Part shown: positions 51 to 54,373 of the stretch, in pieces
Layout: every line of letters starts with the position of its first letter
Numbering within the stretch: position 1 is the first letter of the stretch
Source of the DNA: Chrysemys picta bellii
Taxonomy: Eukaryota
Assembly: GCF_011386835.1 (NCBI RefSeq)
Contig: NC_088810.1
Coordinates: 10,354,001 to 10,418,000, forward strand
DNA length: 64,000 nucleotides
Direction of reading: 5' to 3'
Position numbers and translations under genes: made by a program
Notes under the pieces: model-generated
The model's input: the letters and a program-made list of their open reading frames with translations, nothing else
What the model was told of the DNA's origin: nothing
The model's database searches: none

Positions 51-638
51 TAGGGTGACCAGATGACAGGAAGAAAATATCAGGACACAAGGGGTGGGGT
101 AACCAGTGGAGCAAAAAAAATCAAAAACTGAGTGCTGCCGGTGTAACGACACAAACAGCTCCCTCTCCCAATTCTCTACTGTGGCCCAGTGCTGCTGGCA
201 GTTGGGGTGGGGAGGAAGCCGAGAACAGCTGAGTGCTGCGGGCAGAGGAGATTATGCACCCTCCCTTAGCTATGCATACCTTCGAGGGTGACCAGATGTC
301 CCGATTTTATAGGGACAGTCCTGATTTTTGGATCTTTTCCTTATATAGGCTCCTATTACTCCGCACCCCCCGTCCCGATTTTTCACACTTGCTGTCTGGT
401 CACCCTAATACCTTCAGCCTCTGGTTTTCAGGAGAGGGGGGAAAAAACCAACCGAGAACAGCTGAGTGCTGCCAGCGGTCAGAGGAGACGAAAAAAAAAA
501 AAAAGCCGAGAACAGCCGGCGGAGGGGGAAAAAAAAAAAAGCGGAGTGCAGCATCCCGACCGAAGATCAATCGGGATGCGGGACAAATACCTAAATATCA
601 GGACGGTCCCGATTTTATCGGGACGTCTGGTCACTCTA
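51..638. mobile_element. Non-autonomous hAT-type MITE (TAGGGTGACC TIR family)
   Basis: TIRs tagggtgacc (51) and ggtcactcta (638); exact 8-bp TSD GGACCCAC at 43-50 and 639-646; 8-bp TSDs are typical of hAT. Confidence 0.85.
284..407. mobile_element. 124-bp hAT MITE nested inside the 51-638 element
   Basis: gagggtgacc...ggtcacccta; exact TSD ATACCTTC at 276-283 and 408-415; same length and family as 53645-53768. Confidence 0.85.
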
Positions 639-705
639 GGACCCACACATGTGAAACAGAGCTCATTTCTAGTTCAGTCCCATCTTTTCAAAAAAGAACT
701 TTAGG

Positions 706-801
706 TAGGGTTAACATACATCCGTATTTTTCCAGACATGTCAGGCTTTTTGGTTCTTAAATCGCCGTCCGGGAGGAAAATACGGATGTATGGTAACCCT
801 A
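706..801. mobile_element. Short hAT-like MITE (TAGGGTTA/TAACCCTA termini)
   Basis: Inverted termini tagggttaacatacatccgta / tacggatgtatggtaacccta; similar ends at 24188 and 24698; no clean TSD. Confidence 0.6.
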
Positions 802-2260
802 TTGGTACAAAATATACATACTATGGCACATCTCTTAAATCAGAGCTTTTTATAGGGATCCGGTTGCTAAGAAATGAAAGGCTTTTTTTTACATTTTTTT
901 TTAAGTCATCCCTGCCGGGGCCCTGCCGAAAATGTTCGAATTGGGCCCCGCACTTCCTAAAGCCGGCCCTGCAGCTAGGCACCGGGGTGGAGTGTGCCAG
1001 CGAGGCCCAGACAGATGCGGCTGAGTGAGCTGATCTCCGGCCTGGGCAGCCGTAGGGAAGCCACTGGGGGCTTCAGTGCCATTGACTGCAGGGATAACGC
1101 CGACATGCTTCATTTAGTGCTCCTGACAGTAAGTCCAGTGATTCGCTGTCACTTTGTGAGGGTGGGAGTGGGGTTGTCACAGCTGTAAATATTTTCAAAG
1201 GGGGCCCAGCCCTAAACGTTGGAGAACCCCTGCTCTAGAATGGGTTTTAAACCACCAGACGCCCTTTAGGACAGTAACATTTTCCATCTAGTTCCCTAGG
1301 CCGGAGCGTCTCAGCTCACCATCGTCCCAGAATCCCCCTCCTACCTAGTCTCGGATTCAGGTACGATGCCCTGAATTTAAACACCTGACAGACTCTAGCA
1401 ATTGTTGGGGAAGTTACTGTCTTTGAGCTCCGCTCTAGCTCAACTCCCAGATCTGGGCTGGAGCAGAAAACCCTGAGGTAGGTTCTCCAGCCGGGGCCGG
1501 ACACAGAGTTGGTCGGAAAGCTTTTGATAGAACCGTTTTCCATTGGAAAAGGCCGTTTTGTCAAAATTAAAATCTTTGGTGGGGACGTGTTGGTTTTGGA
1601 TGGGAAAAGTCTAAATGAATTATTTTGACATTCTCATTCTGGGCGCTATTCCTGGCCTTCTGGCTGAGTCCCTTTCTGTGACTCAGTTTCCTCCTGTGTA
1701 CAATTGAGGTATTGATACTGACCTTTCTGAGGCGCTTTGAGATCTACAGATGAAAAACACCATCTAGAGGGGAAGGATGGCCCAGTGGTTGTTGGGCACT
1801 AGTCTGTGACTTGGGAAACTCAGGCAATTCTCTGCTACACAACAGACTTCCTGTATGGGCTGGGGCAAGTCACTTTAGGCACCTAGCTTCCCTTGAAATC
1901 AGTGATGTTGCCTGAGTCTGCAGAGAGCCTGAGCCAATTGCTCTGAAATCAATGCAAGTTACGTGCTTAAATACCTGTGAATTTCTAGGCCTCAATTTCC
2001 CCATCTGTAGAATGGGGATAATAGCCCTGCCCTATCCCCAGATGTGGTGGAAGGATAAAGACATTAATGAAGCCAGAAGCGCTTTGAGCTCTACTAATGA
2101 AAAGCACTGTGTAAGAGCTAGAGATCATTTATTGTGCTGGCTTTAATGGCGCTGGGCTAAGTCACGCTAGATGGGAGCTGATCCCCACGGCCTTATTTTT
2201 ACAAGTAATGGTAACTTGCAGCTTGGTCTGGAGTCGTCTGAGCGGCTGATTCTCCTCCGG

Positions 2261-2926
2261 CTATGGCAGCATGCAGGTGATCTTCATGATGGTTTTGGAA
2301 TACTCATGGGAGGCTGGCTTGAACTCGTCCACCAGCGGCTGAAGCTCCCGAATCACTGTCTCCAGTTGGTCTCTCTCTATGCCGCCCAGGATCGCGCTGA
2401 AAATCAAGTCGACACCCACACCCAGGAGTGCACCAACAAATATGGCGCCGACAATGGAGGAACCGACCTTGACCACGAGCGTCATCATTTTGCTCATGAC
2501 GCTGGTCGTCACCTTCGATGACACCAGCTTGATTAGGATCCCCAACGCTAACCCAGTGAAGCCGCTCACCCCCTTGGCCCAATTGTGGAGAATCTGCATC
2601 TTCTTGGCATCAGGCTCCTGGAAATCGTGAAGCTTTCGGTAGAGATCTGGCTCCAGTTCGCTCTTCAACCTTGCATCGATGGCCTGCAGCGTGTCTTGGA
2701 TGGACTGTATGGCTGCGAGGAGTACGTCGCAGTTCTCCCGGACGGTGCCGTTCTTGTTCATCTTAATGGGGTGCAACTCGCAGTGACAGTGTGTGTTTAA
2801 GGCTTTAATCAGATCGTTGGTGGTATCAAAATTGAGCTCTATGCAGTTGATCAGGTCCTGGTGTAACCGCACCACCTCCTCCCGCCTCGCTGGGTTGCCA
2901 GGGTACAGGATATCGCTCCAGGACAT
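2261..2926 (-). CDS. SMCO3: SMCO3-like protein A (221 aa), single coding exon
   Basis: Intact ORF. MSWSDILYPGNPARREEVVRLHQ..LN.H...GTVRENCD...LEPDLYRKL matches the recalled SMCO3 pattern ([20 protein letters not shown]...GTIKENCD...LEPTLYRKL). Acceptor cctctcctggcAG at 2938-2939, 11 nt before ATG; AATAAA at 2128-2133 (-). A paralog, not necessarily the SMCO3 ortholog. Confidence 0.88.
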   Translation of the reverse strand: MSWSDILYPGNPARREEVVRLHQDLINCIELNFDTTNDLIKALNTHCHCELHPIKMNKNGTVRENCDVLLAAIQSIQDTLQAIDARLKSELEPDLYRKLHDFQEPDAKKMQILHNWAKGVSGFTGLALGILIKLVSSKVTTSVMSKMMTLVVKVGSSIVGAIFVGALLGVGVDLIFSAILGGIERDQLETVIRELQPLVDEFKPASHEYSKTIMKITCMLP

Positions 2927-4177
2927 TCTCGAGAGAGCTGCCAGGAGAGGAAGAGGAAGGAGGCGTTAGTAACCCTCCCCACTGCACACACACCCCCGTG
3001 CAAATCACAGACTTAGCCAGTGCAGAGACTCAGCTGCCATTAAAACAAAAAAGTCTCCAGGGCTCCGATCCCCAAAGGTCTTTAGGTGCCTAATTCCCGT
3101 CAGTCCGTGGGAGTTCTGCGCCTAAACACCTTGGAGGTTCTAGGGAGGAAGGACTCGGCCAGTGGGTCCCGCACCCCCGAAAGCGTCACACCCCAAACCA
3201 CGGGGTCTCGGGAGGAAAGTGCCGCGAGGACCCAGCCAGAGCCTCCAGCTGGGAGAGGGAGAATCCGCCCAGCAACCTCGGGGCTCTCAGCCCCGCTCCC
3301 CAACAGACCCTCAATGGCCAGAGATCCCCCTCGCCCCCGCAGTGCCCCAGCTACTGCCCCAGACACCCCCACTTCTCCCCCCACGTTACCTCCCCACATT
3401 CCCCCGATCTCTGTCCCAGCACCCACCCCCTGCACCCCAACACCTTCCAGCACCCCGAACCATCCACCCAGGAGCGCGGCAGCATCCCCCATCTACCCGG
3501 CCACCTCCTGCCCCAGCCGCGGAGCTGCCCAGTTCCCGGCAGTTGCATGACTTGCTCCCTCCCCCCTGCTGCCCGGGGGGCCCAGCTGTGGGGCAGAAGC
3601 TGCCGTTTCTGGCTGTCTGCAGATTAGCCCATGAAGTAATTTGCTCAAAACGCCAGGCCTGGAGCTGGTCGCAGCTGGGCAGCTTTGTTCTGGCTTCAAG
3701 GGGCACCTGGGGATAGTTTCATTTTTTGCCTCCTCCCCAGAGCTGGGCGCAGTCTCTAGTCAGGGTCTCCCGCTATCCGGAGGGGATCCCACCTCCCGGC
3801 TCCCACTCGCTATTCACCCGTTTCCCCAGCCCAGGGTCGCGCTCACCCGCTTGGCCACAGCATCCCCTGGGGCGCTCACGGGCAGCTGGTTCCACAGGAC
3901 ACCTGGGTCCTTCCCAGAGCTGCAGCTCGCCAGGGTCCCACTTTGGAAAGCAGAACTCCCTCCCCCGCATCGGTTACAGACAGGGCAGCTCCCCCCTCTC
4001 ACAGCGACCCCCCCCCAGTCTGTGGGTGACCGATGTTCTTTGTCCCTAGACATGGCACCTTGCCAGGGGCTGCATGAATCCCCTGTTGTTGGAGGAGCCC
4101 AGTTCGCCAAGCGATCCGGGGGCTCTCACTGCACGACCCCTGCTCCGATTCGTGTCTCCGCCGATGGGGCGAGTTAC

Positions 4178-4324
4178 CTGCTCGCTGGGCGGGGGGGAAG
4201 CCGAGGGGCCGTTCGCCTGGGCAGAGGTCAGCTCGGGTCCGCGGGCAGCAGCCTGGGCTCTCCGGAGAGGATCCCTTTGCTGTGACGCTCCCCGCACGCC
4301 GGAGCAGGGACTCTCGCCTTTATA
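4178..4324 (-). promoter_or_regulatory. TATA box and non-coding exon 1 of gene A
   Basis: TATAAA at 4319-4324 (-); donor CAG|GTAACT with the intron starting at 4177; both conserved in the mirror copy (51186, 51333). Confidence 0.7.
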
Positions 4325-4752
4325 GGAGGCTGGTCCTTGCTGTCACTTCCCAGTCAGCCGCCGAGATCCCATTGGCAGACCCGGAGCCAGCTGTGGTCAG
4401 GAGCGCGGTGCCAGTGGATGTCACATGGGCCTTCAAGTGGCTGCTTCGTGCCTGCGGCTTCCAGTTCCCCGCGTGGTTTCCAGGAACTCGAGTCTGGCTG
4501 GTTTCCAAGCCCCCGTTTGCGCCTCAGTCACGAGGGGCAGAAAGATCCAGGATCGAATCAATCCATGAGCCCGGCCGGGCCCCCGCTGCGAGCGCCTCCT
4601 GCTGGCAGTGCCCGGGGGAATTGCTACCCCGCCCTTTGGCTTGTGCCAACTTCCCCTTTCTCCCCTAACGGGAGCTTTATAAGGAGAGGCGGAGAGCCGG
4701 TGTCGTTCGCTCCTTCGCCCACCGGGACAGCAACCGCGCCGAGGAGCTACAG
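4325..4752. promoter_or_regulatory. Bidirectional promoter between genes A and B, plus non-coding exon 1 of gene B
   Basis: GAS consensus TTCCAGGAA at 4478-4486; ATTGG near 4372; TTTATAA at 4676-4682 (+); donor CAG|GTGAGA at 4753; CpG-rich. Confidence 0.6.
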
Positions 4753-6361
4753 GTGAGAGCCCCCGACCCCACCGATCGGGTCGGAATCGACGCGGGATAC
4801 GGCTCGGGGCTGAGTCCTTTCGCTTCGGCCTTTATACGCCACCAAACAGCCCTTTAAATCCCGTCCCCCGGGATACAGACCAGCTGCGCGCAGCCGGCGC
4901 ATTGCACCCTTAGCCACAAGAACCTGCTTCCAGCGGGGGGGGGGGGGGGGGGGGGACGGACGCAAACTTTTATGGCTGGGCCGGGCCCCCTTTGAAAATA
5001 GTTCAGGCTCTGACGACCCCACCACATGCCCCACAAGTGTTAGCAAATCACTGGGCAGAGAGGAGAACTGAGTGAAGCCTCTAATCGCCATCCCTGCATC
5101 AACGGCGCTGAAGCCCCAGTGGGCATCGCTGGCGCCCTCCACCCCGGTGCCTGCCTGCTCTCTTCGGCTGGGCTGGTAGGAGCCTGCATTGGCTTCAGCT
5201 CTGTCCTCGTCTCTCTGCCCGGGTGCAAACTCTCCTCCTACGGCCCTGCTTCGCACTTCCGCTGCTGAGCTGCAATACAATGAAACCTCGTCCTGCCCGA
5301 GCTGTGGGGTGCTGCTGCCCGTGCCCCTGTGCTGCTGCCGGCGGCGGCACTGCCCCCAGAGCTGGGCGGCTGGAGAGCTGAAACCCCTCCCCGGCAGAGT
5401 CCTCGAAATATGGTACCTCTAGAGCTCGTGATCCCCCTACAACAGCCTCGCACCCCCTTCTGGGGCCGGCCCCCTAGTTTCAGAAACACTGACTGGGGAG
5501 TTTCCGAAATGATCTTCTTCAGCGGGCACAGATCACTTCCACCCGGCGTCATCACTGATCCACACCCACGCATCCAGCTGCTGCCCCAGTCTTGGGGACC
5601 CTGGGGACCCTCTCCGGGTGCAGCCCTGCCGAGAGCTGGAACCCCCAGCCAGCCGCCGGCCCCCGGGGTGCAATGCAGCCCTTGAGGGTATGTCTGCACT
5701 GCAACTAAACCCCTGTGGCTGGCCTGCCGGGCTGCAGACTAGCAGTGTAGACGTGCAGGCTTGGACTGGAGCCCAGGTGGTGGGACTGTGCCTGGGGGGT
5801 TGGTCCCAGAGCCCGGGCTCCAGCCTGAACCCAGATGTCTGCATGGCAATTTTTAGCACCCCAGCCTGAGTCAGACCAGATGCCGCTGTTCCACGGGGCT
5901 TTTAGTCCAGTGTCGACGGACCTGAGACTCCCCCGTCACTTCGACACTCCCTGTCCCCGGACTCCACCCCAATGGCGCGCTGCCTCTGGTTCGCAGTGTC
6001 GCTCTCTTGGGGCCCGCAGTAGCTGCAAAGTGGGTAACGGACTGACGTGCTTTGCACACCCCATCTAGCACAGCAGTGCCCCTGTACCTCACCACCGCCA
6101 TTCTGGCTCTCCTCATTAGCCATATAAACGTCAGATCCCTTTCTGGGTCTTGCTAGACTCTCTGCATCAGCAAGATCATGAGGCCGTGAGTTCCACAGGT
6201 AACTCCCAGGGTTGTTGTGAAATAGCATTCCCTCTACTCCATTTCATAGGGGCTCCCTGTCGGTTCCATTGCACATCCCCTTGGCCTTGTGCTGGGGATC
6301 CTGGAGGGGAAACTCTTTAAGCTCCTCACCTGCGCTCTCTGCTTTGTTTCCCAGCCTCGTG

Positions 6362-7195
6362 ATGCTGTCCCTGTTCTCCGGCACAGAGAGCGAAAGAGAG
6401 AGGCTCGTGCGCGCCAGCCAGTCCCTGCTCAACTCCCTGGAAGGATGCATCTCAGGCACCCACGCTCTGCTCCGCATCCTCAACCAGCACCTTGACACCA
6501 GCGTGTCCCTGGAACCAGTGGGGGGCAGCGTCGGCGTGGGGGAGAACTTGGAGCGCCTGCTGCGGGCGGCGTGGGAGATACACGCCGCAGCAGAGCAGAC
6601 GGACAGACACGTGCGGAAGAACACCAGCCGGGACCTGTACGCCCGCATGGCCTCCCCCCACACCTCACTGCAGGAGAAGGGGGCCATCGTCCGGGACTTC
6701 CACCAGGCCACCATGGGGATCTTCGGCAGCGTGGGTGGCCCCATGGTGGCCGTGCTACTGCAGAACGCCGGCCTCCCGGAGCGGCTGGAGGCGGCTCTGC
6801 GGGAGTTGGAGGCCTCCCCGGTCCTGCACCTGCCGATGGACGCCCTGCGCCAGAGCAGCAAGGAGATCGCCAGGGCTGTGTCCGCTTGTGCCACCCCTGG
6901 GGGCCCAACTGTGGAAACGGCTGCAGAGCCCCCCGAGAATGGCCCCTTCTCTGGGACCGGCGTGGTGCAGAGTCTGGGCGAATACCTGCCCGATGTCCTC
7001 ACGGGGCGTCGTGCTAGGAACGCCCTGGCAGCGGCCGCTGGGCACCTGGAGGAGGCGCTTCGGGCACTGGCACCGGCCTGCAAGTCTTTCCAGTTGGCGG
7101 CTGCCGCGGCTGAGGTCTACATGGCCCTGATCACGGAGCAGCAGCCGGGAACGGGAGAGGGGCCGGGCCAGAATCCTGCCGGCGTCGCCCATTGA
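6362..7195 (+). CDS. Divergent SMCO3-family protein B (277 aa), single coding exon
   Basis: Intact ORF; acceptor tttgtttcccAG at 6353-6354, 7 nt before ATG; AATAAA at 7329-7334. ERERLVRASQSLLNSL..T..LLRILNQHL...GENL..LL.A..EI...TD......DLY aligns to the N-terminal helices of gene A. An intact paralog is at 45306-46139. Confidence 0.8.
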   Translation: MLSLFSGTESERERLVRASQSLLNSLEGCISGTHALLRILNQHLDTSVSLEPVGGSVGVGENLERLLRAAWEIHAAAEQTDRHVRKNTSRDLYARMASPHTSLQEKGAIVRDFHQATMGIFGSVGGPMVAVLLQNAGLPERLEAALRELEASPVLHLPMDALRQSSKEIARAVSACATPGGPTVETAAEPPENGPFSGTGVVQSLGEYLPDVLTGRRARNALAAAAGHLEEALRALAPACKSFQLAAAAAEVYMALITEQQPGTGEGPGQNPAGVAH

Positions 7196-10100
7196 TCCAT
7201 GCAGGCAGAGCCGTGACAGCGCCCCCTCACCACAGCTCACGCACGGGCAGGCTTTGCCCCGGGCTCTGCGCTGGTTAACGAGCCCGGCAGAGCCCAGCAT
7301 GTGGGGCTGGCAGCCGGGAACCGCAGCTAATAAAGGGAACTGAGCAAAACCCCAGGCCTGAGTCTTACTGGTTTGTCCCGGGTGGCGTGCTGGCCCAAGG
7401 GCCTTAGAACGAGACTCCCCACCCGGCCCCTGGGGAAAATCAGGAGTAACTTGGGGAGAGGGGGGAGCAATGGGGCCAATTCCCCTCTCTGATGTAAATC
7501 AGGAGTAACTCCATTGATGTCAAAGGGCCAATTCCCTTTCACTCTGGTGTAAATCAGGTGTAACTCGGTGGGGGGGAGGGATCAATAACCTGAACCACAA
7601 ACGAACTGGTTACGGTTATTTTTCCTGCAATTTTTTTGTGTGGGGGCGTTTGCTGAAAAAACAAAATAATAAAAAAATCCATTTTCAAAACCCTTTTCTG
7701 GTAAAAATAAAAACCCAGGTGGTGGTTTGGGTTGAAAGTTTGTGGTTTCGGTTTTTTAAAAACTTCCTTTAAAAAAAAAAAAAAAAAGAATTGAAAACCT
7801 GATTTTTCTTTGTTACTTCAAAACTGACACGTTGGTCCCAGCTTTGGTTCCAGGGTTTTCCCGGGTTTTGCAAACTGCCTCATTTCATGTGCAAACAGGG
7901 AGCCCAGATCCCCCGATATCAGGGGCTTTGTCTGGGAACCCCCAGACCGGGCAGGACGCGGGGTGGCCAGGGCTGGGTGTGAGTCAGAGCTCATTCCCCA
8001 GCGGGCTCTCAGGTCTGGGCGTTGACCCGGCCCGTGGTACTTTGGGCTGGGCTGGGCCAGAACCCACCCGCCCGCAGGGCCCCAGGGTGCAGCAGGGGGC
8101 TCCGGAGTCGCACTGCAGTGGAACCAGCAGCAGGGAACAGATGCTGGGGTCAGGGAGCCACAGGTCCGGTGCTCTGGGACAGTCGCTGGGGGGGCTGTAC
8201 AGGGGCCAGCCCCCCCTTAGGGTCTCACTCTGTCGCCAGGGGAAGCCACTTGGCTTCACCACCTCCTGGGACCCTACCTCGGTGCTTGCAGTCCCCTCCC
8301 TGCAGCGACTCCACCTGAGACGGACTTCTAAGGGAGACGTGTACCCCCAAAGGGGGCACTGCCCCCAGCATCTGCTGGGGCTCCCAGCCGGTGGGGGAAG
8401 GGCAGGCGGGTTTGTTAGGTGGCTGCACCCAGCATGGCCTGTCCTCAGTCAACCAGAGAGCCGGAAGCTACAGCCTGGTCCATGGGCAGCTCCGGGCCCC
8501 AGCCAAATATGTCCGACCTTGGCTCCCGCTCTTCCAGCTGGCTTCCTGCAAGGGGTGGGGGGGAGTCACCCTGGGCGTTAGTTGCTAGATCGGCAATGTC
8601 CCGGCAGGTTGGCTTTGCCATTGTCTTCATGGACTCGCCAGCGTCACGGGCCCCAAATCAAGACAGGCAGGATCAGCCGCCCCTGGGTGGTAGCTTGCCC
8701 TAGAGAAAACAGCCCTTTCCAGCCCACAGGGGCCAGCGTGGCACATAGGGGAAACTGAGGCACAGACAGTCTTCATACAAAATAATGCAGACACTTCCCA
8801 CTGCGCTACTCTGTGCAGGTGCAACCTGAGACTCACAGGAAACGCATGTGAGCAGAGCTCCCACGACTGCCAGCTGGCATGGACATAGCCACGGGACTCA
8901 GTAACTCCCCTGCCCCCATGTATCTTGGGTGTGGGGCAACACGCGCGCACACACACACACACAGAGCAGGGCTCATCCCCTCCAGCAGACACACATGCAC
9001 ACACACATACAGCACCTCTATGTCCAAGGGGTTCCTACGTGCATCAGATAAGCCCCCAACCCCCCCTCCCTCCCAGAGATTCCCTCATGTGACTGGGGTA
9101 TGTGCCCCAGCCTAAGTGGTGTCTAATGGTTAGAGCAGTGGGGGCTGGGAGCCAGGACACCTGGGTTCTGTCCTGGCTCTGGGAGGGGAGGGGAGTGGGG
9201 TCTAATGCTTAGAATACGGGACTGTGCACCAAGACTCACTGCAGCCGGAGGGTTTTTGGCAGTTCTGCCAGGGTCATTACACGTTTGCAGGCCCATCTTC
9301 CAGTCCCTGCCCGGCCCACTCGCCCTATCGGGTGGCAATGAGGAGGCACCGGGCACCTGATGGTTGGGGGAGAGGAGAGGGGAGGAGATCGGAGGCCCAG
9401 GATCAGGACCCAAGCCCAAGTTTCCACCTCTGGCTTGTTGGCTCTGGGCCAGGGCCCAGCCTCTCACCTACATTCCCTGCCATTCCCCTGCACTGGACCC
9501 ACAGCTTGAAGTCTTGGGATTCCCCAGCCTGGCCCCAGGTGCTCCGTACGCTGGCTGGAGTCACTCTGGGGTAAATCAGGAGTAAAGCCATGGGGACCGA
9601 TTCCTTTCGCCCTCACCTGGGGGTAAATCATTTCTGTAGTTCTTCTCAGAACCCTCCCCAATTGTCGAATGTCCTGTTTGACATGTGGCTCCCCCGCCCA
9701 CCCCAGAGCTGGGCGTGGTTTCCAGTCAGGGTCTCCCCCATGCTGTATCCAGAGGGGACCCCACCTCCCAGCTCCTACTCTCTAATCCCCTGCTTCTCCA
9801 GCCCAGGGCCGTGCTCCTCCTCTCACCCAGGGAGCTCTGGTCCAGTGGGTTCCACCAGGATCTCTGGGTCCTTCCCGCATTGCTGCCTTCCAGGGTGCAG
9901 CCCCCCACCATGTAACTCCTACCAATATCAGTTGTGTCCCTCTCTTAGCCAGTGTACTGGGCGCTCATGGTGGGTTGATTCTCCTTGAAAATCTACCGAT
10001 TTGTCCCATGTCACAAGAGGAGTCCGTGGTGGATTCGAACCCAGATCTCCAAATGGAGGCTGGCCATTATCAAAGAGTCTGTAGCACAAGTAGGGATATT

Positions 10101-10779: not shown

Positions 10780-11115
10780 CTTTGTATGGACCCATCTTCT
10801 GTTGCGGAGGGAGAGAAGCTTTCGCACGGCTGTTGGATGGACACCAGGCTAAACAACTCCAAATGCCGGTCCCTCACCTGTGCTGCCATGCACAAATTAA
10901 GGTCTGCCAAGGTTTGGTTTGCTGACTGACAGCCAGGGTGGCTTCCTGACTATCTCCCATTTCTGGGAAAGGGGCAGCTCAGCCTGTTACTTTCGGTTTC
11001 CATCAGAGTCAGATGGAAATGCAGGCTCCAAACTGGCTCTTGGGACTGTCCCAAGCTCCCTGTCAATCAGACGGGGCTGTCTGAGCAATTTAAGATTCTC
11101 CATTGCTTGCACTTG
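10780..11115 (-). promoter_or_regulatory. ISRE+GAS module, copy 1
   Basis: TTCTGGGAA at 10961-10969 and TTTCGGTTTC at 10991-11000; homologous to 15815-16155 (inverted) and 19320-19660 (direct). Confidence 0.6.
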
Positions 11116-15814: not shown

Positions 15815-16155
15815 ACTTTGCGATGTGCAGGCAATGGAGAATCTTTCATCCCTCAGACAGCCCCGTCTGATTGGCTGGGAGCTTGTGACTGTCTCAGGAG
15901 CCAGTCTGGAGCCTGCATTTCCATCCGACTCTGACAGAAACCGAAAGCAACAGGCTGAGCTGCCCCTTTCCCCGAAATGGGAGAAAGCCAGGAAGCCACC
16001 CTGGCTCTCAGTCAGCAAACAAAACCCTGGCAGAACTTAACACAGAAACACAGCTGAGGGACCGGCATTTGGAGCTGTTTAGTCTGGCATCCATCCAAGA
16101 GCCGCAGGAAAGCTTCTCTCCCTCCACAACAGAAGATGGGTCCATACAAAATATT
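15815..16155 (+). promoter_or_regulatory. ISRE+GAS module, copy 2
   Basis: ATTGG at 15870-15874, GAAACCGAAA at 15937-15946, TTTCCCCGAAA at 15967-15977. Confidence 0.6.
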
Positions 16156-19319: not shown

Positions 19320-19660
19320 GTGGGTGAGGGAATGTCTTTCATTGGACCAACTTCTGCTGGGGAGAGAGACAAGCTTTGGAGCTGCTGTTTGAAGAACGGT
19401 AAGCAGCTCCACATGGTGTTCCCTCGCCTGTGTTTCCTGGCAAGAGAAGGGCTGCCAGAGTTTTGTTTGCTGACTGAGAGCCAGCCCCGCTTCCTGGCTT
19501 TCTCCCATTTCTGGGAAAGGGGCAGCTCAGCCTGTTGCTTTCGGTTTCCATCAGAGTCAGATGAAAATGTCGGCTCCAAACTGGCTCTTGGGACTGTCAC
19601 AAGCTCCCTGTCAATCTGAGCGATTTAAGATTCTCCGTTGCTTACACCTTGCAAACGCAG
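19320..19660 (-). promoter_or_regulatory. ISRE+GAS module, copy 3
   Basis: TTCTGGGAA at 19509-19517, TTTCGGTTTC at 19539-19548. Confidence 0.6.
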
Positions 19661-27526: not shown

Positions 27527-28771
27527 TTACTGGGGGCTTTCAGCCTCAAATTGCTCCCTCAAGGCACCCCTAATCCTTGCAGCCCCGCGCTGGGCCCCTG
27601 TAATAGCCCTGCTCTCTGCCTGTTCAAATTCAGCCTCCAGGTGTTGAACCTCCGAAGTCCATGCCTGAGTGAAGCTTTCACCCTTCCCTTCACAAATATT
27701 ATGGAGGGTACAGCACGCGGATATAACCATGGGGATGTTGTCATCGGCCAGGTCCAGCTTCCCATTCAGAGAGCACCAGCGGCCCTTTAAACGGCCAAAG
27801 GCACACTCCACAGTCATTCAGCACCGGCTCAGCCTGTTGAACCGCTCCTTGCTGCTGTCAAGGCTCCCTATGCAGGGTTTCATGAGCCACAGCATTAAAG
27901 GGTAAGCGGGGTCTCCCAGGATCACAATGGGCATTTCGACTTCCCCTACAGTGATCTTCCGCTCTGGGAAAAAAGTCCCGGCCTGCAGCTTCCTGAACAG
28001 CCAAGTGTTCCGAAAGATGCGTGAGTCATGCACCTTTCCAGACCAGCCTGCGTCAATGTCAATGAAATGCCCACGATGATCTACAAGCGCCTGGAGAACC
28101 ATAGAGAAATACCCCTTCCGATTAACGTACTCAGATCCTAGGTGGGGTGGTGCCAGAATAGGAATGTGAGTCCCATCTATCGGTCCTCCGCAGTTAGGGA
28201 ACCCCATTTGTGCAAAGCCAGCCACAATGTCCTGCACGTTGCCCAGAGTCACGGTTCTTCTGAGCAGGATGCGATTAATGGCCCTGCAAACTTGCATCAA
28301 CACGATTCCAACGGTCGACTTTCCCACTCCAAACTGGTTAGCGACCGACCGGTAGCTGTCTGGAGTTGCCAGCTTCCAGATTGCAATAGCCACCTGCTTC
28401 TCCACCGTCAGGGCAGCTCTCAATCTCATGTCCTTGCACCGCAGGGGGGGGTGAGCTCCTCACACAGTCCTATGAATGTGGCTTTCCTCATCCAAAAGTT
28501 CTGCAGCTACAGCGTGTCATCCCAGACTTGCAGGACAATGTGATCCCACCACTCAGTGTTTCTTTCCTGAGCCCAAAAGCGGCGTTCCACGGTGGTGAGT
28601 ATGTCCGTGAATGCCACAATGCCATGAATGCCACGTGTCGTATGCATTACTCGAGTCGATATCATCGTCGGAGTCCTCACTGTCCGTTTGGATCGTAAGG
28701 AGTAACTCCACTGCCAAACGCGAGATGCTGGTGAAACTCGTTAGCATATTCCTCAGCAGTTCGGGCTCCAT
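27527..28771 (-). pseudogene. Harbinger (HARBI1-like) DDE transposase, frameshifted
   Basis: IDGTHIP, GDPAYPL and VECAFGRLKGRW motifs split over several frames. Confidence 0.9.
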
Positions 28772-40217: not shown

Positions 40218-40960
40218 CTAAACATCAGGCAACAACGGGGAGGATCGGGGGGAGCATGTGGCCATGGGTACCCATCTTGCTCTGTCAATCTGTTTCCTCA
40301 CTTCCCCAGGTGGGTATTGTAGTTTTACGAATGCTTGATAAAGATCTTGTAGGTGTTTGTCTCTGTCTGAGGGGTAGGAGCAAATTCGGTTGTATCTTAG
40401 GGCTTGGCTGTAGACAATGGATCGTATGATGTGTCTTGGATGGAAGCTGGAAGCATGTAGGTACGTATAGCGGTCAGTAGGTTTCCGGTATAGGGTGGTG
40501 TTTATGTGACCATCACTTATTTGCACTGTAGTGTCCAGGAAGTGGATCTCTTGTGTGGACTGGTCCAGGCTGAGGTTGATGGTGGGGTGGAAATTGTTGA
40601 AGTCCAGGAGGAATTCTTCAAGGGCCTCCTTTCCGTGGGTCCATATGATGAAGATGTCATCAATGTAGCGCAAGTAGAGGAGGGGCACTAGGGGACGAGA
40701 GCTGAGGAAGCGTTGTTCTAAGTCAGCCATAAAAATGTTGGCATATTGTGGGGCCATGCGGGTACCCATAGCAGTGCCACTGACTTGAAGGTATAAGTTG
40801 TCCCCAAATCTGAAGTGGTTGTGGGTGAGGACAAAGTCACAAAGCTCAGCCACCAGGCTTGCTGTGGCCTCATCAGGGATACTGTTCCTGACAGCTTGTA
40901 GTCCATCCTCATGTGGAATATTGGTGTAAAGTGCTTCTACATCCATGGTGGCCAGGCAGG
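40218..40960 (-). mobile_element. Penelope-like retrotransposon RT fragment
   Basis: MDVEALYTNIPH, GTAMGTRMAPQYANIFM, YLRYIDDIF, LYRKPTD motifs; open frame; truncated at both ends. Confidence 0.92.
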
Positions 40961-41764
40961 TACCGCATTCACAGAGCCAAATGTGCCGTCGCGGCGCATT
41001 CTGCATGAGGGAGAGAGTACGGGGGTCTCTGCGGGGAACTGTGACTCTCCACCACCGTGAGGCAGGCTGGGAGTCTGGGTATCCTTTGCTGCCTCATCCC
41101 TCCCCACCAGGCTGCGAGCCCGGGCTGTGGTCGGGCATAGGGGCACCAGTTTAATAATACTGTGTAGGGCCCCAGAAATCCTAAGGATGGCCCTGGCACT
41201 GCCCATGAACATAAGTCGATAACATCCCTACTTGTGCTACAGACTCTTTGATAATGGCCAGCCTCATGTTTAGAGATCCAGGAGATCTGGGTTTGAATCC
41301 ACCAGGACTCCTCTTGTGACCTGGGACAAATCATTAGATTTTCAAGGAGAATCAACCCACCATGAGCGCCCAGCGCACTGGCTAAGAGGGGTACACAATT
41401 CATGTGGGTAGGAGTTACATTGTGGGGGGCTGTACCCTGGAAAGCAGCAATTTGCGAAGGACCCAGAGATCCTGGTGGAACCCACTGCGTTGGAGCTCCC
41501 AGGGTGAGAGGGCGAGTACGGCCCTGGGAGGGAGAAGCAGGAGATTAGAGAGTAGGAGCTGGGAGGTAGGGTCCCCTCTGGATACAGCATGTGGGGGACC
41601 GTGACTGGAGACTGCGCCCAGCTCTGGGCGGGACCCACACATCAAACAGGACAGTGGACAATTGGGGAGGGTTCTGAGAAGAGCTACAGAAATGATTTAC
41701 CCCCAGGTGAGGGAGAGGGGAATCGGCCCCCGTGGCATAGGGACTGGGAGTGGCTGGCTTATTA

Positions 41765-42063
41765 CAGAAGCGGCTTTTCCTCTCCTGGAATTGACACCTC
41801 CTCATCTATTATTGGGAGTGGACTACATCCACCCTGATTAAACTGGTCCTGTCAACACTGGTTCTCCACTTGTGAAGTAACTCCCTGCTCTCCATGTGCC
41901 AGTATATAATGCCTGCATCTGGAACTTTCACTCTATGCACCCGAAGAAGTGAGGTTTTTACCCACGAAAGCTTATGCCCAAATAAATCTGTTAGTCTTTA
42001 AGGTGCCACCAGACTCCTTGTTGTTTTTGTAGATACAGACTAACACGGCTACCCCCTGATACT
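41765..42063 (+). mobile_element. Penelope 3' end fragment
   Basis: cacgaaagcttatgcccaaataaatctgttagtctttaaggtgccaccagactcc...cacggctacccccctgatact; absent from the left arm near 9575. Confidence 0.8.
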
Positions 42064-45000
42064 ATTTACCCTAGGTGACTTCAGCCAGCGTACGGAGCAC
42101 CTGGGGACAGGCTGGGGAATCCCAAGACTTCAAGCTGTGGGTCTAGCGCAGGGGAATGGCAGGGAACATGGGTGAGGGGCTGGGCCATGGCCCAGAGCCA
42201 ACAAGCCAGAGGTGGACACATGGGCTTGGGTCCTGATCCTGGGCCTCAGATCTCCTCCCCTCTCCTCCCCCCAACCATCAGGTGCCCGGTACCTCCACAT
42301 TGCCACCCAATAGGGCGAGTGGATCGGGCAGGGACTGGAAGATGGGCCCGCAAACAAGTAATGACCCTGGCAGAACTGCCCAAAACCCTCCGGCTGCAGT
42401 GAGTCCTGGAACACAGTCCCCTACTCTAACCACTAGACCCCACTCCCCTCCCCTCCCAGAGCCAGGAGAGAACCCAGGTGTCCTGGCTCCCAGACCCCCT
42501 GCTCTAACCATTAGACACCACTTCACCCAGCAAGCTGGGGCACATACCCCAGTCACATGAGGGGAATCTCTTGGGGGGTTGGCGGCTTATCTGATGCACA
42601 TAGGAAACCCTTGGACAGAGAGGTGCTGTGTGTGTGTGTGTGTGTGTTCCCTCACACCCAAGATACATGGGGGCGGGGGAGTTACTCAGTCCCATGGCTG
42701 TGTCCATGCCAGCTGGCAGTCGTGGGAGCTCTGCTCACATGCGTTTCCTGTGAGTCTCAGGTTGCACCTGCATGGAGTAGTGCAGTGGGAAGTGTCTGCA
42801 CTATTTTGTATGAAGACCGTCTGTGCCTCAGTTTCCCCTATGTGCCACGCTGGCCCCTAGGGGCTGGAAAAGGGCTGTTTTCTCTCAGGCAAGCTACCAC
42901 CCAGGGGCGGCTGATCCTGGCTGTCTCAATTTGGGGCCCGTGTTGCTGGCGAGTCCATGAAGACAATGGCAAAGCCACCCTCCTGGGACATTGCTGACCT
43001 AGCAACAAACGCTCACGGTGATTCCCCCCCGCTTGCAGGAAGCCAGCTGGAAGAGCGGGAGCCAAGGGCAGACGCGCTTGGCTGGGACTCGGAGCTGCCC
43101 ATGGCCCAGGCTGTAGCTTCCGGCTCTCTGGGCTGACCGAGGACTGGCCATGCTGGGTGCAGCCATCTAACAAACCCGCCTGCCCTTCCCCCACCGGCTG
43201 GGAGCCCCGCAGATGCTGGGGGGGGGGGGGCAGTGCCCCCTTCGGGGGTACACATCTCCCTCAGGTGTCTGTCTTAGGCAGAGTCGCTGGAGGGAGGGGG
43301 CTGGAGGCGCTGAAGTTGGGTCCCAGGAGGCGGTGAAGCCAAGTGGCTTCTCCTGGTGACAGAGCGAGACCCTAAGGGGGGGGGGGGGCTGGCCAGCTGT
43401 AGGGCCCCCCAGGGACTGTCCCAGAGCACCGGACCTGTGGTTCCCTGACCCCAGCATCTGTTGCCTGGTGCTGGTTCCGCTGCAATGCCCAGTCACCCAG
43501 TTTTGTGAGATCCTTTTGTAGCTAGCTAGAGGGAGTATATGGGAATAGATAGATATTTAAATGATGGCTTCAACCATTTGGCAACGGGGACATTTTGGGT
43601 TCAAATGGTGGGTGTTCCATTAAAAATATTAGTTTCCAAAAACTTGAATAAATGGCGGGTGGGCCAGGATCTTCTTAATCCTTCCCTCCCGCCATTGGCC
43701 AAACACAAAAATGGTGGTGGGGGGGGGTGACCCAACAAGCGGAAGGAGAGTGGGAGGGAGAGGGGGGCAGAGCGGAAGATTGGGGGAGCGGGATGGGGAC
43801 AGCACGGGAGATTTGGGGAGTGGGATGGGAGATTTGGGGAGGAAACTCTGGCAGAAGTGGGGGCAGAAGGCAGGAGCCTGGAGCGAGGGAAGTGGGCATC
43901 CGAACCAGGAGCTGCTTGAAGCAGATGCCATGTAAACACCTGGCCTGGGACTGAAACCACAGAACAGGCCCACCAGGGCGAGCTGCCAGTGCATGGCAGG
44001 GTGGGGGGCTGCATTGGTGGGGGAGAGTCTTTGTGGGTCAAGCCAAGGGACGGGGGCTGCATGCTGCGGGGGGAGGGGGTCTGTGTAACCCCCACTGGAG
44101 CGCCTGAGCCGGTCTTGGCCTGTGTTAGGCCCATGCAGTGCTACTGTTATGGGGCGGGTGAGCCAGGGGTTCACACTCCCTCCCAAGGAGGGAGAGTTGG
44201 GTTTGTGCAGAGGTGGGGGGCCGGGATCTGGGACCCCCCCCCACGCCCCAGGACCCCCCAGCTGACACAGGGAGTTGGGGTCCTTGGAGAGCATGTTTTG
44301 GGGGTCAGTTCAACGGGGCTGTTGGCAGGTCACATTTTTGCTTGGCAGGTAGGGGACCAGGGCGGGAGTGTGAACAACGGGACACTTGTTTTGGGGGACA
44401 GATGGTGGGGAGGTTTAGTTGCCTGTCTAACACCAAGCCCCTAATATCTGGACGTCTGGGCTCCCTGTTTGCACGTGAACAGAGGCAGTTTGCAAAACCT
44501 GGGAGAAAACAGGAACCAAAGCTGGGGCGAATGGGTCCTTTACGAAGTAAAAAGGAAAAATCAGGTGACAGTTTTCAAACTTTTTTCGTTTGTTTAAAAA
44601 AAAAAGGGAAATTTTAAAAAACCGCAAATCACCAACTTTAAACCCAACCCTGCCCCCTCAACCTGTTTTTCTTTTACCAAAAAAGGGTTTGGAAAATTAA
44701 CCTTTTTGTTCTTTTGTTTTTTCAACGCCCCTCCTCCCCCACCCCCCCAAAAAAAAAACCCAGCAGGAAAAGCAGTAACCATTTGTGGCTAAGGTTTTTG
44801 TTTTTCAGTTAAAACCCAGTAGGTTTCAGTGTTTTAAATGTGGCAGGAGAATAGTCGTTGCTTTTCTTCCCCATTTTAACCAAAAACGTGAATGTTTTGT
44901 TTTATCTGAACCCAAAAATCATTTTTGAAAATGGCATTTTTTGAATTACTCCTGATTTACACCAGGGTGAGTGAGGGGGAATCGGCCCCATTGACTCCAG

Positions 45001-45305
45001 TGGAGTTATTCCTGATTTATACCAGAGAGGGGAATCGCTCCCCACCCCGAGTCACTCCTGATTTTCCCCAGGGGCCGGGCGGGGAGTCTGGTTCTAAGGC
45101 CGTTGGGCCAGCACGCCAGCCGGGACAAACCAGTAAGACTCAGGCCTGGGGTTTTGCTCCGTTCCCTTTATTAGCTGCGGTTCCCGGCTGCCAGCCCCAC
45201 ACGCTGGGCTCTGCCGGGCTCGTTAACCAGCGCAGAGCCCGGGGCAAAGCCTGCCCGTGCGTGAGCTGTGGTGAGGGGGCGCTGTCACGGCTCTGCCTGC
45301 GCAGG

Positions 45306-50114: not shown

Positions 50115-50321
50115 TGTAAAGCCGACAGACCCCGGTCGTCAGCAGGTGGGATCGAACCTGGGACCTCTGGCGCTTAGTGCATGGGCCTCTACAGCATGAG
50201 CTAAAAGCTACGTGACTGTCCGCTAAGGCAGTAGAGAAGGATCATTTTCTCTCTCTCGTTAAGTGGTCTTGGTGCCACTAGATGGGCCAGACCACCACAC
50301 CCAGGAGGTGGGTGGGTTACA
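50115..50321 (-). mobile_element. 207-bp TGTAA...TTACA element containing a tRNA-like Pol III A/B box
   Basis: The reverse strand reads tagctcatgctgtaga...ggttcgatccc; inverted pentamer termini. Confidence 0.55.
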
Positions 50322-50889
50322 TGGCACAAGCCAAGCCGCACATCAAGCTGCCCACGGCTGGCATCGGAGGGCTAAAAGGGGAAGTTGTTCTGGCCCTGAC
50401 CGTGTTACCCTGACTCAGCTGACTCCAGCCCTGGGGGGTCCTTCTGCTAATGCCCCAAGGGGACGCTCCATACAGAGACCTGCAGCCAACTATCGCTGCT
50501 GCTCCAGAGGAGTTGGTTGATTCTCTGCCTAAGCACCAGCCTCCACTCCCCTCCCAGAGATGAGGAGAGAACCCAGGAGTCCTGGTTCCCAGCCCCGCCC
50601 CCAGCAGACCCCACTCCCTTCCCCTCCCGCAGCTGGGGAGGGAACCCCGGGGCGCTGACTCTGACTCGCCGCCTTTCACCTCTCTCCCTGTCCGGTTCCG
50701 CGATGGGAGAAGCCTGGAGCCGCCCTCCATGGAGGCTGGATGGACTCGGAGGGGTGCTGCCGGAAGCAATTGTCCTGGGCAAGGCCAGCTGCAGGTGCCT
50801 GCAGGCGGGACCCAGCCGGGGCTCGCTGGATCTTTCTGCCCCGCGTGACTGAAGAGGAAACAAGGTCTTGGAAACCAGCCAGACTCGAG

Positions 50890-51332
50890 TTCCTGGAAAC
50901 CACGTGGGGAACTGGAAGCCGCACCCCAGTGGCTTCACCCTGGGTGTGGGCTCCCTTAGCAGTCCGCAGCGTTTGCATCTTCCAGCAGCCTCCTGCGAGC
51001 CGAGCGATCCCACTCACCCCCTTCCCCAGAGAGCAGCGGGGGCGTCTTTCGCGGGTTCCTTGAGCAACAGCTGGGTCCCAGTAGCAGCCTCTTTAAGGCC
51101 AAGGCGACGTCCATTGGCACCGTGCTCCTGCTGCCCACCGCTGTCTGCCAATTGCCCCATCCTAGCCAGCACGGATCAGCTCTCCTATAAAGGCGAGAGT
51201 CCCCGCTCCGGTGTGCGGGGAGCGTCACAGCAAAGGGATCCTCTCCGGAGAGACCAGGCTGCTGCCCGCGGACCCGAGCTGACCTCTGCCCAGGCGAACG
51301 GCCCCTCGGCTTCCCCCCCGCCCAGCGAGCAG
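50890..51332 (+). promoter_or_regulatory. Promoter and non-coding exon 1 of gene A'
   Basis: GAS TTCCTGGAA at 50890-50898; TATAAA at 51186-51191; donor AG|GTAACT at 51333; acceptor AG at 51725-51726. Confidence 0.7.
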
Positions 51333-54202: not shown

Positions 54203-54373
54203 TAATTCATTGAGACTTTTCCCCGCCAAAACCAATACGTCCCCACCAAACATTTTGATTTTGACAAAACGGCCTTTTCCAATGGAAAACTGTTCTATCA
54301 AAAGCTTTCCGGCCAGCTCTGTGCTCGGCCCAGGCCGGAGAACCTACTTTGGGGTTTTCTGCTCCAGCCCAGA

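What the first reader, a model, noticed from the sequence alone, without database searches (positions are those of the whole stretch)
4319..4752. Compact bidirectional promoter with a central STAT (GAS) site
Two outward-facing TATA-like boxes 350 bp apart (TATAAA at 4319-4324 on -, TTTATAA at 4676-4682 on +) are each followed by a short exon and a good donor. A perfect TTCNNNGAA (TTCCAGGAA, 4478-4486) lies midway. The block gtggtttccaggaactcgagtctggctggtttccaag is identical in the mirror arm (50870-50904) although surrounding promoter sequence has diverged. Known: TTCN3GAA is the STAT consensus. Inference: cytokine-inducible co-regulation of A and B.
Basis: partly seen in the sequence, partly recalled or inferred. 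Interest (0 to 1): 0.7.

Follow-up and report, generated by a model that had tools for sequence, protein, structure and literature searches.

The report
Shared turtle promoter with interferon-type sites
This is the roughly 350-base shared promoter between two back-to-back, poorly understood genes (SMCO3-like and C12orf60-like) in a painted-turtle genome; both predicted splice junctions are real, and its best-conserved core overlaps a STAT-type site, but cytokine induction is still untested.

Summary
All three motifs are at the stated coordinates, and the 36-nt block is identical in the mirror arm. RNA-derived contigs confirm both predicted introns exactly: 2938-4177 in 4 runs from 4 studies, and 4753-6354 in 1 run.

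Gene A (2261-2926, -) and gene B (6362-7195, +) are both Pfam DUF4533 proteins (SMCO3/C12orf60 family). They are 2-exon genes lying head-to-head in a CpG-rich interval. The window is from a painted-turtle-type genome in which this family is expanded.

TTCN3GAA alone is at chance level: 15 seen against 15.5 expected in the window, and P about 0.065 for the interval. Footprinting across 10 turtle copies shows that 4460-4509 is the best-conserved part of the interval, equal to the A TATA box. The footprint centres on GGAACTCGAGTCTGGC, which covers only half of the GAS, and Chelydra has a broken half-site.

A new result: sister copies carry a perfect ISRE (GGGAAAGTGAAAGC) next to the A TATA, as deep as Carettochelys, and an ISRE core next to the B TATA. 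The window copy is 1-2 changes away from these on both sides.

An interferon-type shared promoter is therefore plausible for the family. STAT dependence, the TSS positions and co-induction remain unproven.

It is a new member of a known kind (compare TAP1/LMP2), of moderate interest.

The parts
2261..2937 (-). Gene A exon 2 with the whole CDS (ATG at 2926, stop at 2261; 221 aa, SMCO3-like)
   Evidence: ORF listed. Pfam PF15047 DUF4533, E 6.3e-22. Contigs cover 2206-2941. Best named relatives are turtle 'SMCO3-like' proteins at 74% identity or less.
2938..4177 (-). Gene A intron 1 (GT..AG on the minus strand)
   Evidence: The joint 2937->4178 skips 1240 nt, with ends CT..AC, in X1, X2, X4 and X11.
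4178..4294 (-). Gene A non-coding exon 1. The 3' end (donor) is confirmed. The 5' end is only inferred, about 30 nt downstream of the TATA.
   Evidence: Donor confirmed. The exon is 98% identical in arm 2. The TSS is not mapped: contigs run on to 4363, 4388 and 4491.
4317..4326 (-). A-side TATA box, CCTATAAAGG
   Evidence: Read. Kept in all nine aligned copies, including Chelydra and Platysternon, and also in Carettochelys. Fully conserved 9-mers fall here.
4339..4351 (-). Decayed ISRE, GGGAAGTGACAGC. The homologous site is a perfect GGGAAAGTGAAAGC in Emys, Chelydra, Platysternon and Carettochelys.
   Evidence: The ISRE reporter sequence GGGAAAGTGAAACTA is given in PMC4863739 and PMC10293393.
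4371..4375 (-). CCAAT box (GCCAATGGG on the minus strand)
   Evidence: Conserved in arm 1, arm 2, L002, Emys, Malaclemys, Mauremys copy a and Chelydra.
4460..4509 (.). Conserved central core. It holds the GAS-type palindrome TTCCAGGAA (4478-4486), the 8-nt palindrome ACTCGAGT (4486-4493) and two TGGTTTCCA repeats.
   Evidence: Mean conservation in the four distant copies is 0.82-0.97, against 0.69 for the interval. 8 of the 11 fully conserved 9-mers start at 4483-4490. Alignments are A2 and A3.
4649..4662 (-). B-side ISRE-like motif. It reads GAGAAAGGGGAAGT here, and GAGAAAGGGAAAGT (a perfect GAAANNGAAA core) in L002 and Emys.
4676..4682 (+). B-side TATA-like box, TTTATAA (within GAGCTTTATAAGGAGA)
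   Evidence: Read. Identical in L002, Emys, Malaclemys, Gopherus and Chelydra; one change in Mauremys copy b; absent from arm 2 and Mauremys copy a.
4707..4752 (+). Gene B non-coding exon 1. The donor at 4752 is confirmed. The 5' end is only inferred.
   Evidence: The joint 4752->6355 (GT..AG) lies in X1 contig record 5. The donor ACAG|GTGAGAGC is conserved.
4753..6354 (+). Gene B intron 1
   Evidence: X1. Its first 13 nt, GTGAGAGCCCCCG, are repeated in inverted orientation at 4117-4129 inside A intron 1.
6355..7195 (+). Gene B exon 2 with the whole CDS (ATG at 6362; 277 aa, C12orf60-like)
   Evidence: Translated. Pfam PF15047, E 2.6e-20. Contigs found in all four runs.
50867..50903 (.). Mirror-arm copy of the core, with TTCCTGGAA at 50890-50898
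51184..51193 (+). Mirror-arm A' TATA box, CCTATAAAGG. The A' CDS lies at 51738-52430 (+) and the B' CDS at 45306-46139 (-).

Best explanation
The interval 4178-4752 is the shared divergent promoter of a head-to-head pair of DUF4533 paralogs. One is SMCO3-like, with a membrane segment (A, minus strand). The other is C12orf60-like (B, plus strand). Each gene has a short non-coding first exon and a single coding exon.

The interval is a CpG-rich island about 575 nt long between the two confirmed donors. It has a conserved TATA box on each side, a CCAAT box, and a central 50-nt core that is its most constrained part.

The architecture is of the interferon-stimulated type. The ancestral A promoter had a canonical ISRE directly upstream of its TATA box. 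The B side had an ISRE/IRF-type motif upstream of its TATA box. The core carries a high-affinity STAT-type palindrome.

In the window copy both ISREs have decayed by 1-2 changes while the GAS-bearing core is intact. Any cytokine response of this copy would therefore run mainly through the core (STAT dimers, possibly with a partner on the adjacent ACTCGAGTCTGG), acting on A and probably on B.

What is shown and what is inferred:
- Shown: gene identities, exon structure, splice junctions, motif positions and the conservation pattern.
- Inferred: TSS positions, factor identity, inducibility and co-regulation.
For: - Both ORFs hit Pfam DUF4533.
- Turtle relatives are named SMCO3-like, and the same head-to-head layout is seen in L002, L003, L008 and L010.
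- Both introns are confirmed by spliced contigs.
- GC is 0.66 and CpG o/e 0.80 over 4100-4800, against 0.42 for the window.
- The A TATA is kept in every aligned copy. The B TATA is kept in Emydidae, Gopherus and Chelydra.
- The core 4460-4509 is the conservation peak of the interval. The GAS half-sites are unchanged in Emydidae, Geoemydidae (TTCCGGGAA, a spacer change only) and Testudinidae.
- A perfect ISRE lies next to the A TATA in Emys, Chelydra, Platysternon and Carettochelys, and an ISRE core lies next to the B TATA in L002 and Emys.
- TTCCAGGAA is among the sequences bound by STAT1 and STAT5 in ChIP-seq (PMC2929187, PMC3907443).
- An IRG-type (IIGP) gene neighbours the pair in Gopherus.
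Against: - TTCN3GAA is at chance frequency.
- The conserved footprint is centred on 4483-4498. It covers only the 3' half of the GAS, and Chelydra has TTCCCGGAG.
- The copies sampled from Platysternon, Chelonoidis, Pelodiscus and Carettochelys lack the core.
- Both ISREs are imperfect in the window copy, and the A-side one is deleted in arm 2.
- Contigs cover the whole interval, including both TATA boxes, so the TSSs may lie elsewhere or be dispersed.
- In X2 and X4, B exon 2 is joined to a different 5' piece that is not in the window.
- No paper links SMCO3 or C12orf60 to interferon or STAT.
Confidence: 0.55

Rival explanations
1. The core is a real cis-element, but the STAT match is incidental. 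Another factor, or a pair of factors, binds GGAACTCGAGTCTGG and the two TGGTTTCCA repeats (for example ETS-, NFAT/Rel-, SMAD- or BCL6-type factors). The pair is then expressed constitutively or tissue-specifically, not in response to cytokines.
For: - The fully conserved 9-mers are at 4483-4498, offset from the GAS centre at 4482.
- Position 4478 of the GAS is changed in Chelydra while CCAGACTCGAGTTCC is unchanged there.
- The motif is at chance frequency.
- Transcripts of A are present in all four unselected runs.
Against: - Both half-sites are unchanged in 8 copies from three families, and the only change is in the free spacer.
- ISREs lie next to both TATA boxes in sister copies, which points to an interferon-type family.
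Confidence: 0.3
2. The interval holds two adjacent but separately regulated promoters. The core belongs to gene A only, as an upstream element about 155 nt from the A TATA. B is driven by its own TATA and IRF-like region, or by a different far-upstream first exon.
For: - In arm 2 and in Mauremys copy a, the core, the CCAAT box and the A TATA are kept while the B TATA and B exon 1 are replaced.
- The B junction 4752->6355 was seen in only 1 of 4 runs. In X2 and X4, B exon 2 carries another 5' piece.
Against: - The complete two-TATA arrangement is kept in Emydidae, Gopherus, Chelydra and Mauremys copy b.
- The core sits about midway, 150-190 nt from each TATA.
Confidence: 0.3
3. The identity of the block between the two arms reflects recent duplication or gene conversion among paralogs, not selection on a binding site.
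For: - The arms are 89-94% identical in many non-coding pieces.
- Identity between copies is mosaic. Intron 1 of A is 96% identical to L002 while the A CDS is 86%.
- With roughly 93% background identity, a run of 36 identical bases is not rare.
Against: - The same core is the conservation peak in Gopherus, Mauremys and Chelydra, whose promoters are otherwise only 72-78% identical.
- In arm 2 the core survived between replaced flanks.
Confidence: 0.12

Closest known systems
TAP1/LMP2 (PSMB9) shared bidirectional promoter of mammals
   Same: A short shared interval between two divergent genes. Interferon-type elements drive co-ordinate IFN-gamma induction of both genes (PMC3807107, citing Wright et al. 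1995).
   Different: - TAP1 and LMP2 are unrelated genes. Here the two genes are paralogs of one family.
- The TAP1/LMP2 promoter is, from memory, TATA-less. This one has a conserved TATA on each side.
- Induction is experimentally shown there and untested here.
Mammalian SMCO3 / C12orf60 locus (12p12.3 in human)
   Same: The same two DUF4533 family members lie next to each other in one locus with ERP27 and MGP (PMC7844411). The function of SMCO3 is uncharacterised (PMC12470172).
   Different: - Turtles have several pairs. There are at least three in this genome: arm 1, arm 2 and L002.
- The turtle A proteins are only about 37-40% identical to the non-turtle relatives found.
- I did not fetch or compare mammalian loci. 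Unnamed 225-aa hits that could be human were left untouched.
ISRE-TATA promoters of classical interferon-stimulated genes (ISG54/IFIT2-type ISRE, GGGAAAGTGAAACT)
   Same: Sister copies carry GGGAAAGTGAAAGC 8-15 nt upstream of the TATA. This matches the standard ISRE reporter element in 12 of its first 13 bases.
   Different: In the window copy the motif reads GGGAAGTGACAGC (one deletion and one substitution). In arm 2 it is deleted.
GAS elements (TTCN3GAA), e.g. STAT1/STAT5-bound TTCCAGGAA sites
   Same: An exact palindromic match. The same 9-mer is listed among STAT1 and STAT5A/B ChIP-seq motifs.
   Different: There is no binding or induction evidence here. The surrounding conserved sequence extends 12 nt beyond the GAS on one side.

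Membership tests
Bidirectional (divergent) promoter | Two genes on opposite strands arranged head-to-head | tested here: met
   A lies on the minus strand and B on the plus strand. Both first-exon donors (4178 and 4752) are confirmed by spliced contigs.
Bidirectional (divergent) promoter | Transcription start sites less than 1 kb apart | tested here: inconclusive
   The donors are 575 nt apart, so non-overlapping TSSs must be closer than that. However, the TSSs are not mapped: contigs cannot show starts, and they run through the whole interval.
Bidirectional (divergent) promoter | CpG-island character (usual, not obligatory) | tested here: met
   GC is 0.66 and CpG o/e 0.80 over 4100-4800, against 0.42 for the window.
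GAS element (STAT-dimer site) | TTCN3GAA palindrome | tested here: met
   TTCCAGGAA at 4478-4486 and TTCCTGGAA at 50890-50898.
GAS element (STAT-dimer site) | Occurrence above chance | tested here: not met
   15 seen against 15.5 expected in the window. 6.5% of shuffles of the interval contain one.
GAS element (STAT-dimer site) | Half-sites conserved in related promoters | tested here: inconclusive
   The half-sites are kept in 8 copies of Emydidae, Geoemydidae and Testudinidae, with only a spacer change. They are broken in Chelydra (TTCCCGGAG), and the core is absent from four other copies.
GAS element (STAT-dimer site) | STAT binding and cytokine-dependent activation | not testable with these tools
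ISRE (ISGF3/IRF site) | GAAANNGAAA core close to the promoter | tested here: not met
   The window copy has GGGAAGTGACAGC on the A side and GAAAGGGGAA on the B side, and there is no exact core within 400 nt of either A-type TATA in the window. The feature is met in sister copies: L007, L008, L009 and L006 on the A side, and L002 and L007 on the B side.
DUF4533 / SMCO3-C12orf60 protein family (genes A and B) | Match to Pfam PF15047 above the gathering score | tested here: met
   78.7 and 73.4 bits against a cut-off of 28.6.

The most novel reading that the evidence does not exclude
The turtle SMCO3-like/C12orf60-like pairs are an unrecognised interferon-stimulated gene module. The module is a membrane-anchored paralog plus a soluble paralog, co-induced from a shared ISRE/GAS bidirectional promoter. 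It has been multiplied in turtles, and the membrane partner evolves at dN/dS of about 1 or above, as if in a host-pathogen conflict. Individual copies have been rewired from ISRE (type I IFN) to GAS (IFN-gamma or other STAT) control.
Probability: 0.25. Interest if true: 0.6.

Novelty: new member of a known kind. Interest (0 to 1): 0.4.

Why it matters
SMCO3 and C12orf60 are vertebrate genes without a known function. A conserved ISRE-TATA promoter, a constrained GAS-bearing core, multiplication of the gene pair in turtles, and a fast-evolving coding exon together give a concrete and cheaply testable hypothesis: these are interferon-responsive genes. The natural promoter variants form a ready-made allelic series for dissecting how a shared promoter divides ISRE and GAS input between two genes. 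That series runs from a perfect ISRE in Emys and L002, through a decayed one here, to a deleted one in arm 2. If there is no induction, this is simply an ordinary compact bidirectional promoter.

Tried and rejected
- **Motif enrichment.** TTCN3GAA is not enriched, so the motif count gives no support.
- **TSS mapping from public runs.** Only Logan contigs were available, and they cannot show starts.
- **The 35-letter alternative 5' piece on B exon 2 in X2 and X4.** I searched for it in the window and the fetched loci with up to 6 errors and found nothing. It remains unexplained.
- **Literature.** Nothing links SMCO3 or C12orf60 to interferon, STAT or turtles. The loach paper listed for SMCO3 has no main-text mention.
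- **Fish locus (L011).** No head-to-head partner is called within 10 kb, so it is uninformative.
- **Immune genes elsewhere in the window.** Only LINE reverse-transcriptase and Harbinger transposase ORFs were found.
- **Mirror symmetry of the promoter.** I considered the promoter as a mirror-symmetric product of an inverted duplication. Only a 13-nt inverted repeat at the B donor and in the A intron supports this, and the two ISRE-like motifs are not in mirror orientation. I left it as a side note.
- **Hits not followed.** Unnamed 225-aa hits P0031-P0036 from metagenome or run assemblies could be human SMCO3.

Full report
**1. The observation**

- TTTATA at 4319-4324 (TATAAA on the minus strand);
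- TTTATAA at 4676-4682;
- TTCCAGGAA at 4478-4486.

The 36-mer 4473-4508 recurs without a mismatch, as its reverse complement, at 50868-50903.

The window holds a large inverted duplication. Arm 1 spans about 285-10025 and arm 2 about 41305-54374, with pieces 82-94% complementary.

TTCNNNGAA is not enriched. There are 15 matches in the window against 15.5 expected. 6.5% of dinucleotide shuffles of the 351-nt interval between the two TATA boxes contain at least one. Taken alone, the GAS match carries little weight.

**2. What the genes are**

Gene A is the ORF 2261-2926 on the minus strand (221 aa). Gene B is 6362-7195 on the plus strand (277 aa). Both match Pfam PF15047 (DUF4533) far above the gathering score, with E 6e-22 and 3e-20.

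The word search returned turtle proteins that NCBI names 'single-pass membrane and coiled-coil domain-containing protein 3-like'. The window's own proteins lie on a 25.56-Mb contig that also carries annotated Chrysemys picta bellii paralogs. The best non-self hit to A is only 74% identical.

In mammals, SMCO3 and C12orf60 sit in one locus with ERP27 and MGP (PMC7844411). The function of SMCO3 is described as not well characterised (PMC12470172).

The mirror arm keeps both ORFs open: A' at 51738-52430 (+) and B' at 45306-46139 (-). The rest of the window holds only LINE reverse-transcriptase and Harbinger transposase ORFs.

**3. Transcript evidence**

I laid contigs of four public runs from four studies on 2200-7300. 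The runs contain cDNA, because they carry spliced forms.
- The joint 2937->4178 skips 1240 nt, with CT..AC ends (GT..AG on the minus strand). It is present in all four runs.
- The joint 4752->6355 (GT..AG) is present in X1, in one 983-nt contig covering 4276-4749 plus 6352-6859.

Each gene has a non-coding first exon and an ATG 7-11 nt into its single coding exon.

The TSSs cannot be read from contigs. A-exon-1 contigs run on to 4363 (X11), 4388 (X4) and 4491 (X2). The X1 contig covers the whole interval. So both TATA boxes and the GAS lie inside assembled RNA-type contigs.

Introns are also covered at low depth in the same runs. In X4 the contig over 4387-4591 has a depth of 6.8, like an intronic contig at 7.2. 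This coverage may therefore be background rather than upstream initiation.

In X2 and X4, B exon 2 is joined to 35 other letters. I could not find them in the window or in the fetched loci. Those contigs are a mosaic of B, B' and L002-type letters. A further paralog or an alternative first exon is likely.

**4. Related loci and footprinting**

From named turtle proteins I fetched ten loci:

| Locus | Species |
|---|---|
| L001 | Malaclemys |
| L002 | C. picta, third pair on the same chromosome record |
| L003 | Mauremys |
| L004 | Chelonoidis |
| L005 | Pelodiscus |
| L006 | Carettochelys |
| L007 | Emys |
| L008 | Chelydra |
| L009 | Platysternon |
| L010 | Gopherus |

The same head-to-head A-like/B-like layout is called in L002, L003, L008 and L010.

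The whole interval aligns to these loci at the following identities:

| Locus | Identity |
|---|---|
| L002 | 91% |
| Emys | 89% |
| Malaclemys | 86% |
| Mauremys | 78% |
| Gopherus | 76% |
| Chelydra | 72% |

The alignments A2, A3 and A4 and a per-site profile against the four most distant copies show the following.

(a) The A TATA CCTATAAAGG is kept everywhere, including Platysternon and Carettochelys.

(b) The B TATA (GAGCTTTATAAGGAGA) and the B donor are kept in Emydidae, Gopherus, Chelydra and Mauremys copy b. They are replaced in arm 2 and in Mauremys copy a, which share a different, repeat-like B side.

(c) Between the TATA boxes the conservation peak is 4460-4509, at 0.82-0.97 against a mean of 0.69. 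Of the 11 fully conserved 9-mers among 566, eight start at 4483-4490 and two are at the A TATA.

(d) The GAS half-sites are unchanged in eight copies of three families. Mauremys has TTCCGGGAA, a change in the free spacer. Chelydra has TTCCCGGAG, which breaks one half-site, although the neighbouring CCAGACTCGAGTTCC is unchanged there.

(e) The copies sampled from Chelonoidis, Platysternon, Pelodiscus and Carettochelys lack the core.

The constraint is centred on GGAACTCGAGTCTGGC, which overlaps only half of the GAS. That piece contains the palindrome ACTCGAGT.

**5.

There are ISRE motifs next to both TATA boxes.

On the A strand, 8-15 nt upstream of the TATA, four species carry GGGAAAGTGAAAGC: Emys, Chelydra, Platysternon and Carettochelys. 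This matches the standard ISRE reporter element GGGAAAGTGAAACTA in 12 of its first 13 bases (PMC4863739 and PMC10293393). It survives in Carettochelys, although BLAST aligned only 206 nt of the query there, at 69% identity, over exon 1.

On the B side, about 15 nt upstream of the B TATA, L002 and Emys carry GAGAAAGGGAAAGT, a perfect GAAANNGAAA core. Gopherus and Mauremys copy b keep GTGAAAGT.

The window copy is one or two changes away on both sides:
- 4339-4351 reads GGGAAGTGACAGC on the minus strand;
- 4649-4662 reads GAGAAAGGGGAAGT on the minus strand.

In arm 2 the A-side motif is deleted.

The family's ancestral promoter therefore looks like that of an interferon-stimulated gene. In this particular copy the ISREs have decayed and the GAS-bearing core is what remains intact. 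In Gopherus an IIGP/IRG-type GTPase gene lies 6.7 kb from the pair, which is a weak contextual hint.

**6. Mechanism proposed**

This is a CpG-rich divergent promoter (GC 0.66, CpG o/e 0.80) with a TATA box on each side. Basal activity would come from the CCAAT box and the GC-rich sequence. Inducible input would come from the central core, and ancestrally from the ISREs.

TTCCAGGAA is among the sequences occupied by STAT1 and by STAT5A/B in ChIP-seq (PMC2929187 and PMC3907443), so STAT binding is chemically plausible.

The closest worked example is the TAP1/LMP2 shared promoter, which is induced in both directions by IFN-gamma (PMC3807107, citing Wright et al. 1995).

My estimates are:
- about 0.85 that this is the shared promoter region of the pair;
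- about 0.6 that the core is a functional cis-element;
- about 0.3 that STATs are the factor;
- about 0.35 that this copy is cytokine-inducible at all.

**7. Rivals**

- Another factor binds the core and the GAS match is incidental. The offset footprint and the Chelydra change favour this.
- The core serves A only. Arm 2 and Mauremys copy a keep the core with A while losing the B TATA.
- Identity between the arms reflects gene conversion rather than constraint. Mosaic identities show that conversion is active. However, the core is also the peak in promoters that are only 72-78% identical overall.

**8. Novelty and score**

Compact bidirectional promoters and ISRE/GAS promoters are well known. 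This is a new member of that kind, attached to an uncharacterised gene family that is multiplied in turtles.

The interest lies in the testable idea that SMCO3-like/C12orf60-like pairs are interferon-responsive genes, and in the natural series of promoter variants. Without induction data I score it 0.4.

**9. Limits and rules observed**

I did not fetch or compare the unnamed 225-aa hits P0031-P0036, which might be human SMCO3 from contaminated assemblies.

Noticed in passing
window 2261-2926 (-), compared with L002, L007, L001, L003, L010 and arm 2: The coding exon of gene A is only 85-87% identical to its closest relatives. In the same comparisons its own intron 1 is 92-96% identical and the B CDS 94-99%. 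Nei-Gojobori dN/dS for A is 0.90-1.39 (dS 0.11-0.21), against 0.44-0.77 for B. The ORF stays open in every copy. This suggests diversifying or relaxed evolution, or exchange of the exon among paralogs.
   Followed up: partly
L007:6601-6614, L008:7912-7925, L009:6000-6013, L006:5976-5989; window 4339-4351: A canonical ISRE (GGGAAAGTGAAAGC) lies directly upstream of the A-type TATA box in four turtle lineages, as deep as Carettochelys. It is decayed in the window copy and deleted in the mirror arm.
   Followed up: yes
window 6354 (runs X2 and X4): Contigs holding B exon 2 carry 35 upstream letters that occur neither in the window nor in the fetched loci. The exon part is a mosaic of B, B' and L002-type letters. 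This points to another paralog or an alternative first exon.
   Followed up: partly
window 4117-4129 and 4753-4765: There is a perfect 13-nt inverted repeat, GTGAGAGCCCCCG. One copy starts B intron 1 at the donor. The other lies 48 nt inside A intron 1 on A's strand. It may be a relic of the inverted duplication that created the A/B pair.
   Followed up: no
L002 (same chromosome record as the window) and one search hit list: This genome holds at least three A/B pairs (arm 1, arm 2 and L002), and many 'SMCO3-like' paralogs are found across turtles. The L002 promoter, introns and B gene are closer to arm 1 (93-98%) than the mirror arm is.
   Followed up: partly
L010:15399-16598 (-): In Gopherus evgoodei an IIGP/IRG-type interferon-inducible GTPase gene (PF05049) lies 6.7 kb from the A-like gene.
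   Followed up: no
window 47595-49173 (+), 59364-61157 (+), 40218-41006 (-), 27818-28429 (-): LINE-type reverse-transcriptase ORFs and a Harbinger-type DDE transposase ORF are present. The element at 47595-49173 sits in intron 1 of B' and accounts for much of the extra length of arm 2.
   Followed up: no
window 4936-4957: A run of 22 G lies in B intron 1. The read tool skipped 4924-4968 as a repeat.
   Followed up: no
window 10897-11112, 15825-16040, 19447-19619: Dispersed inverted-repeat copies each carry a TTCN3GAA match (at 10961, 15968 and 19509). They look like copies of a mobile element, and they account for three of the 15 GAS matches in the window.
   Followed up: no
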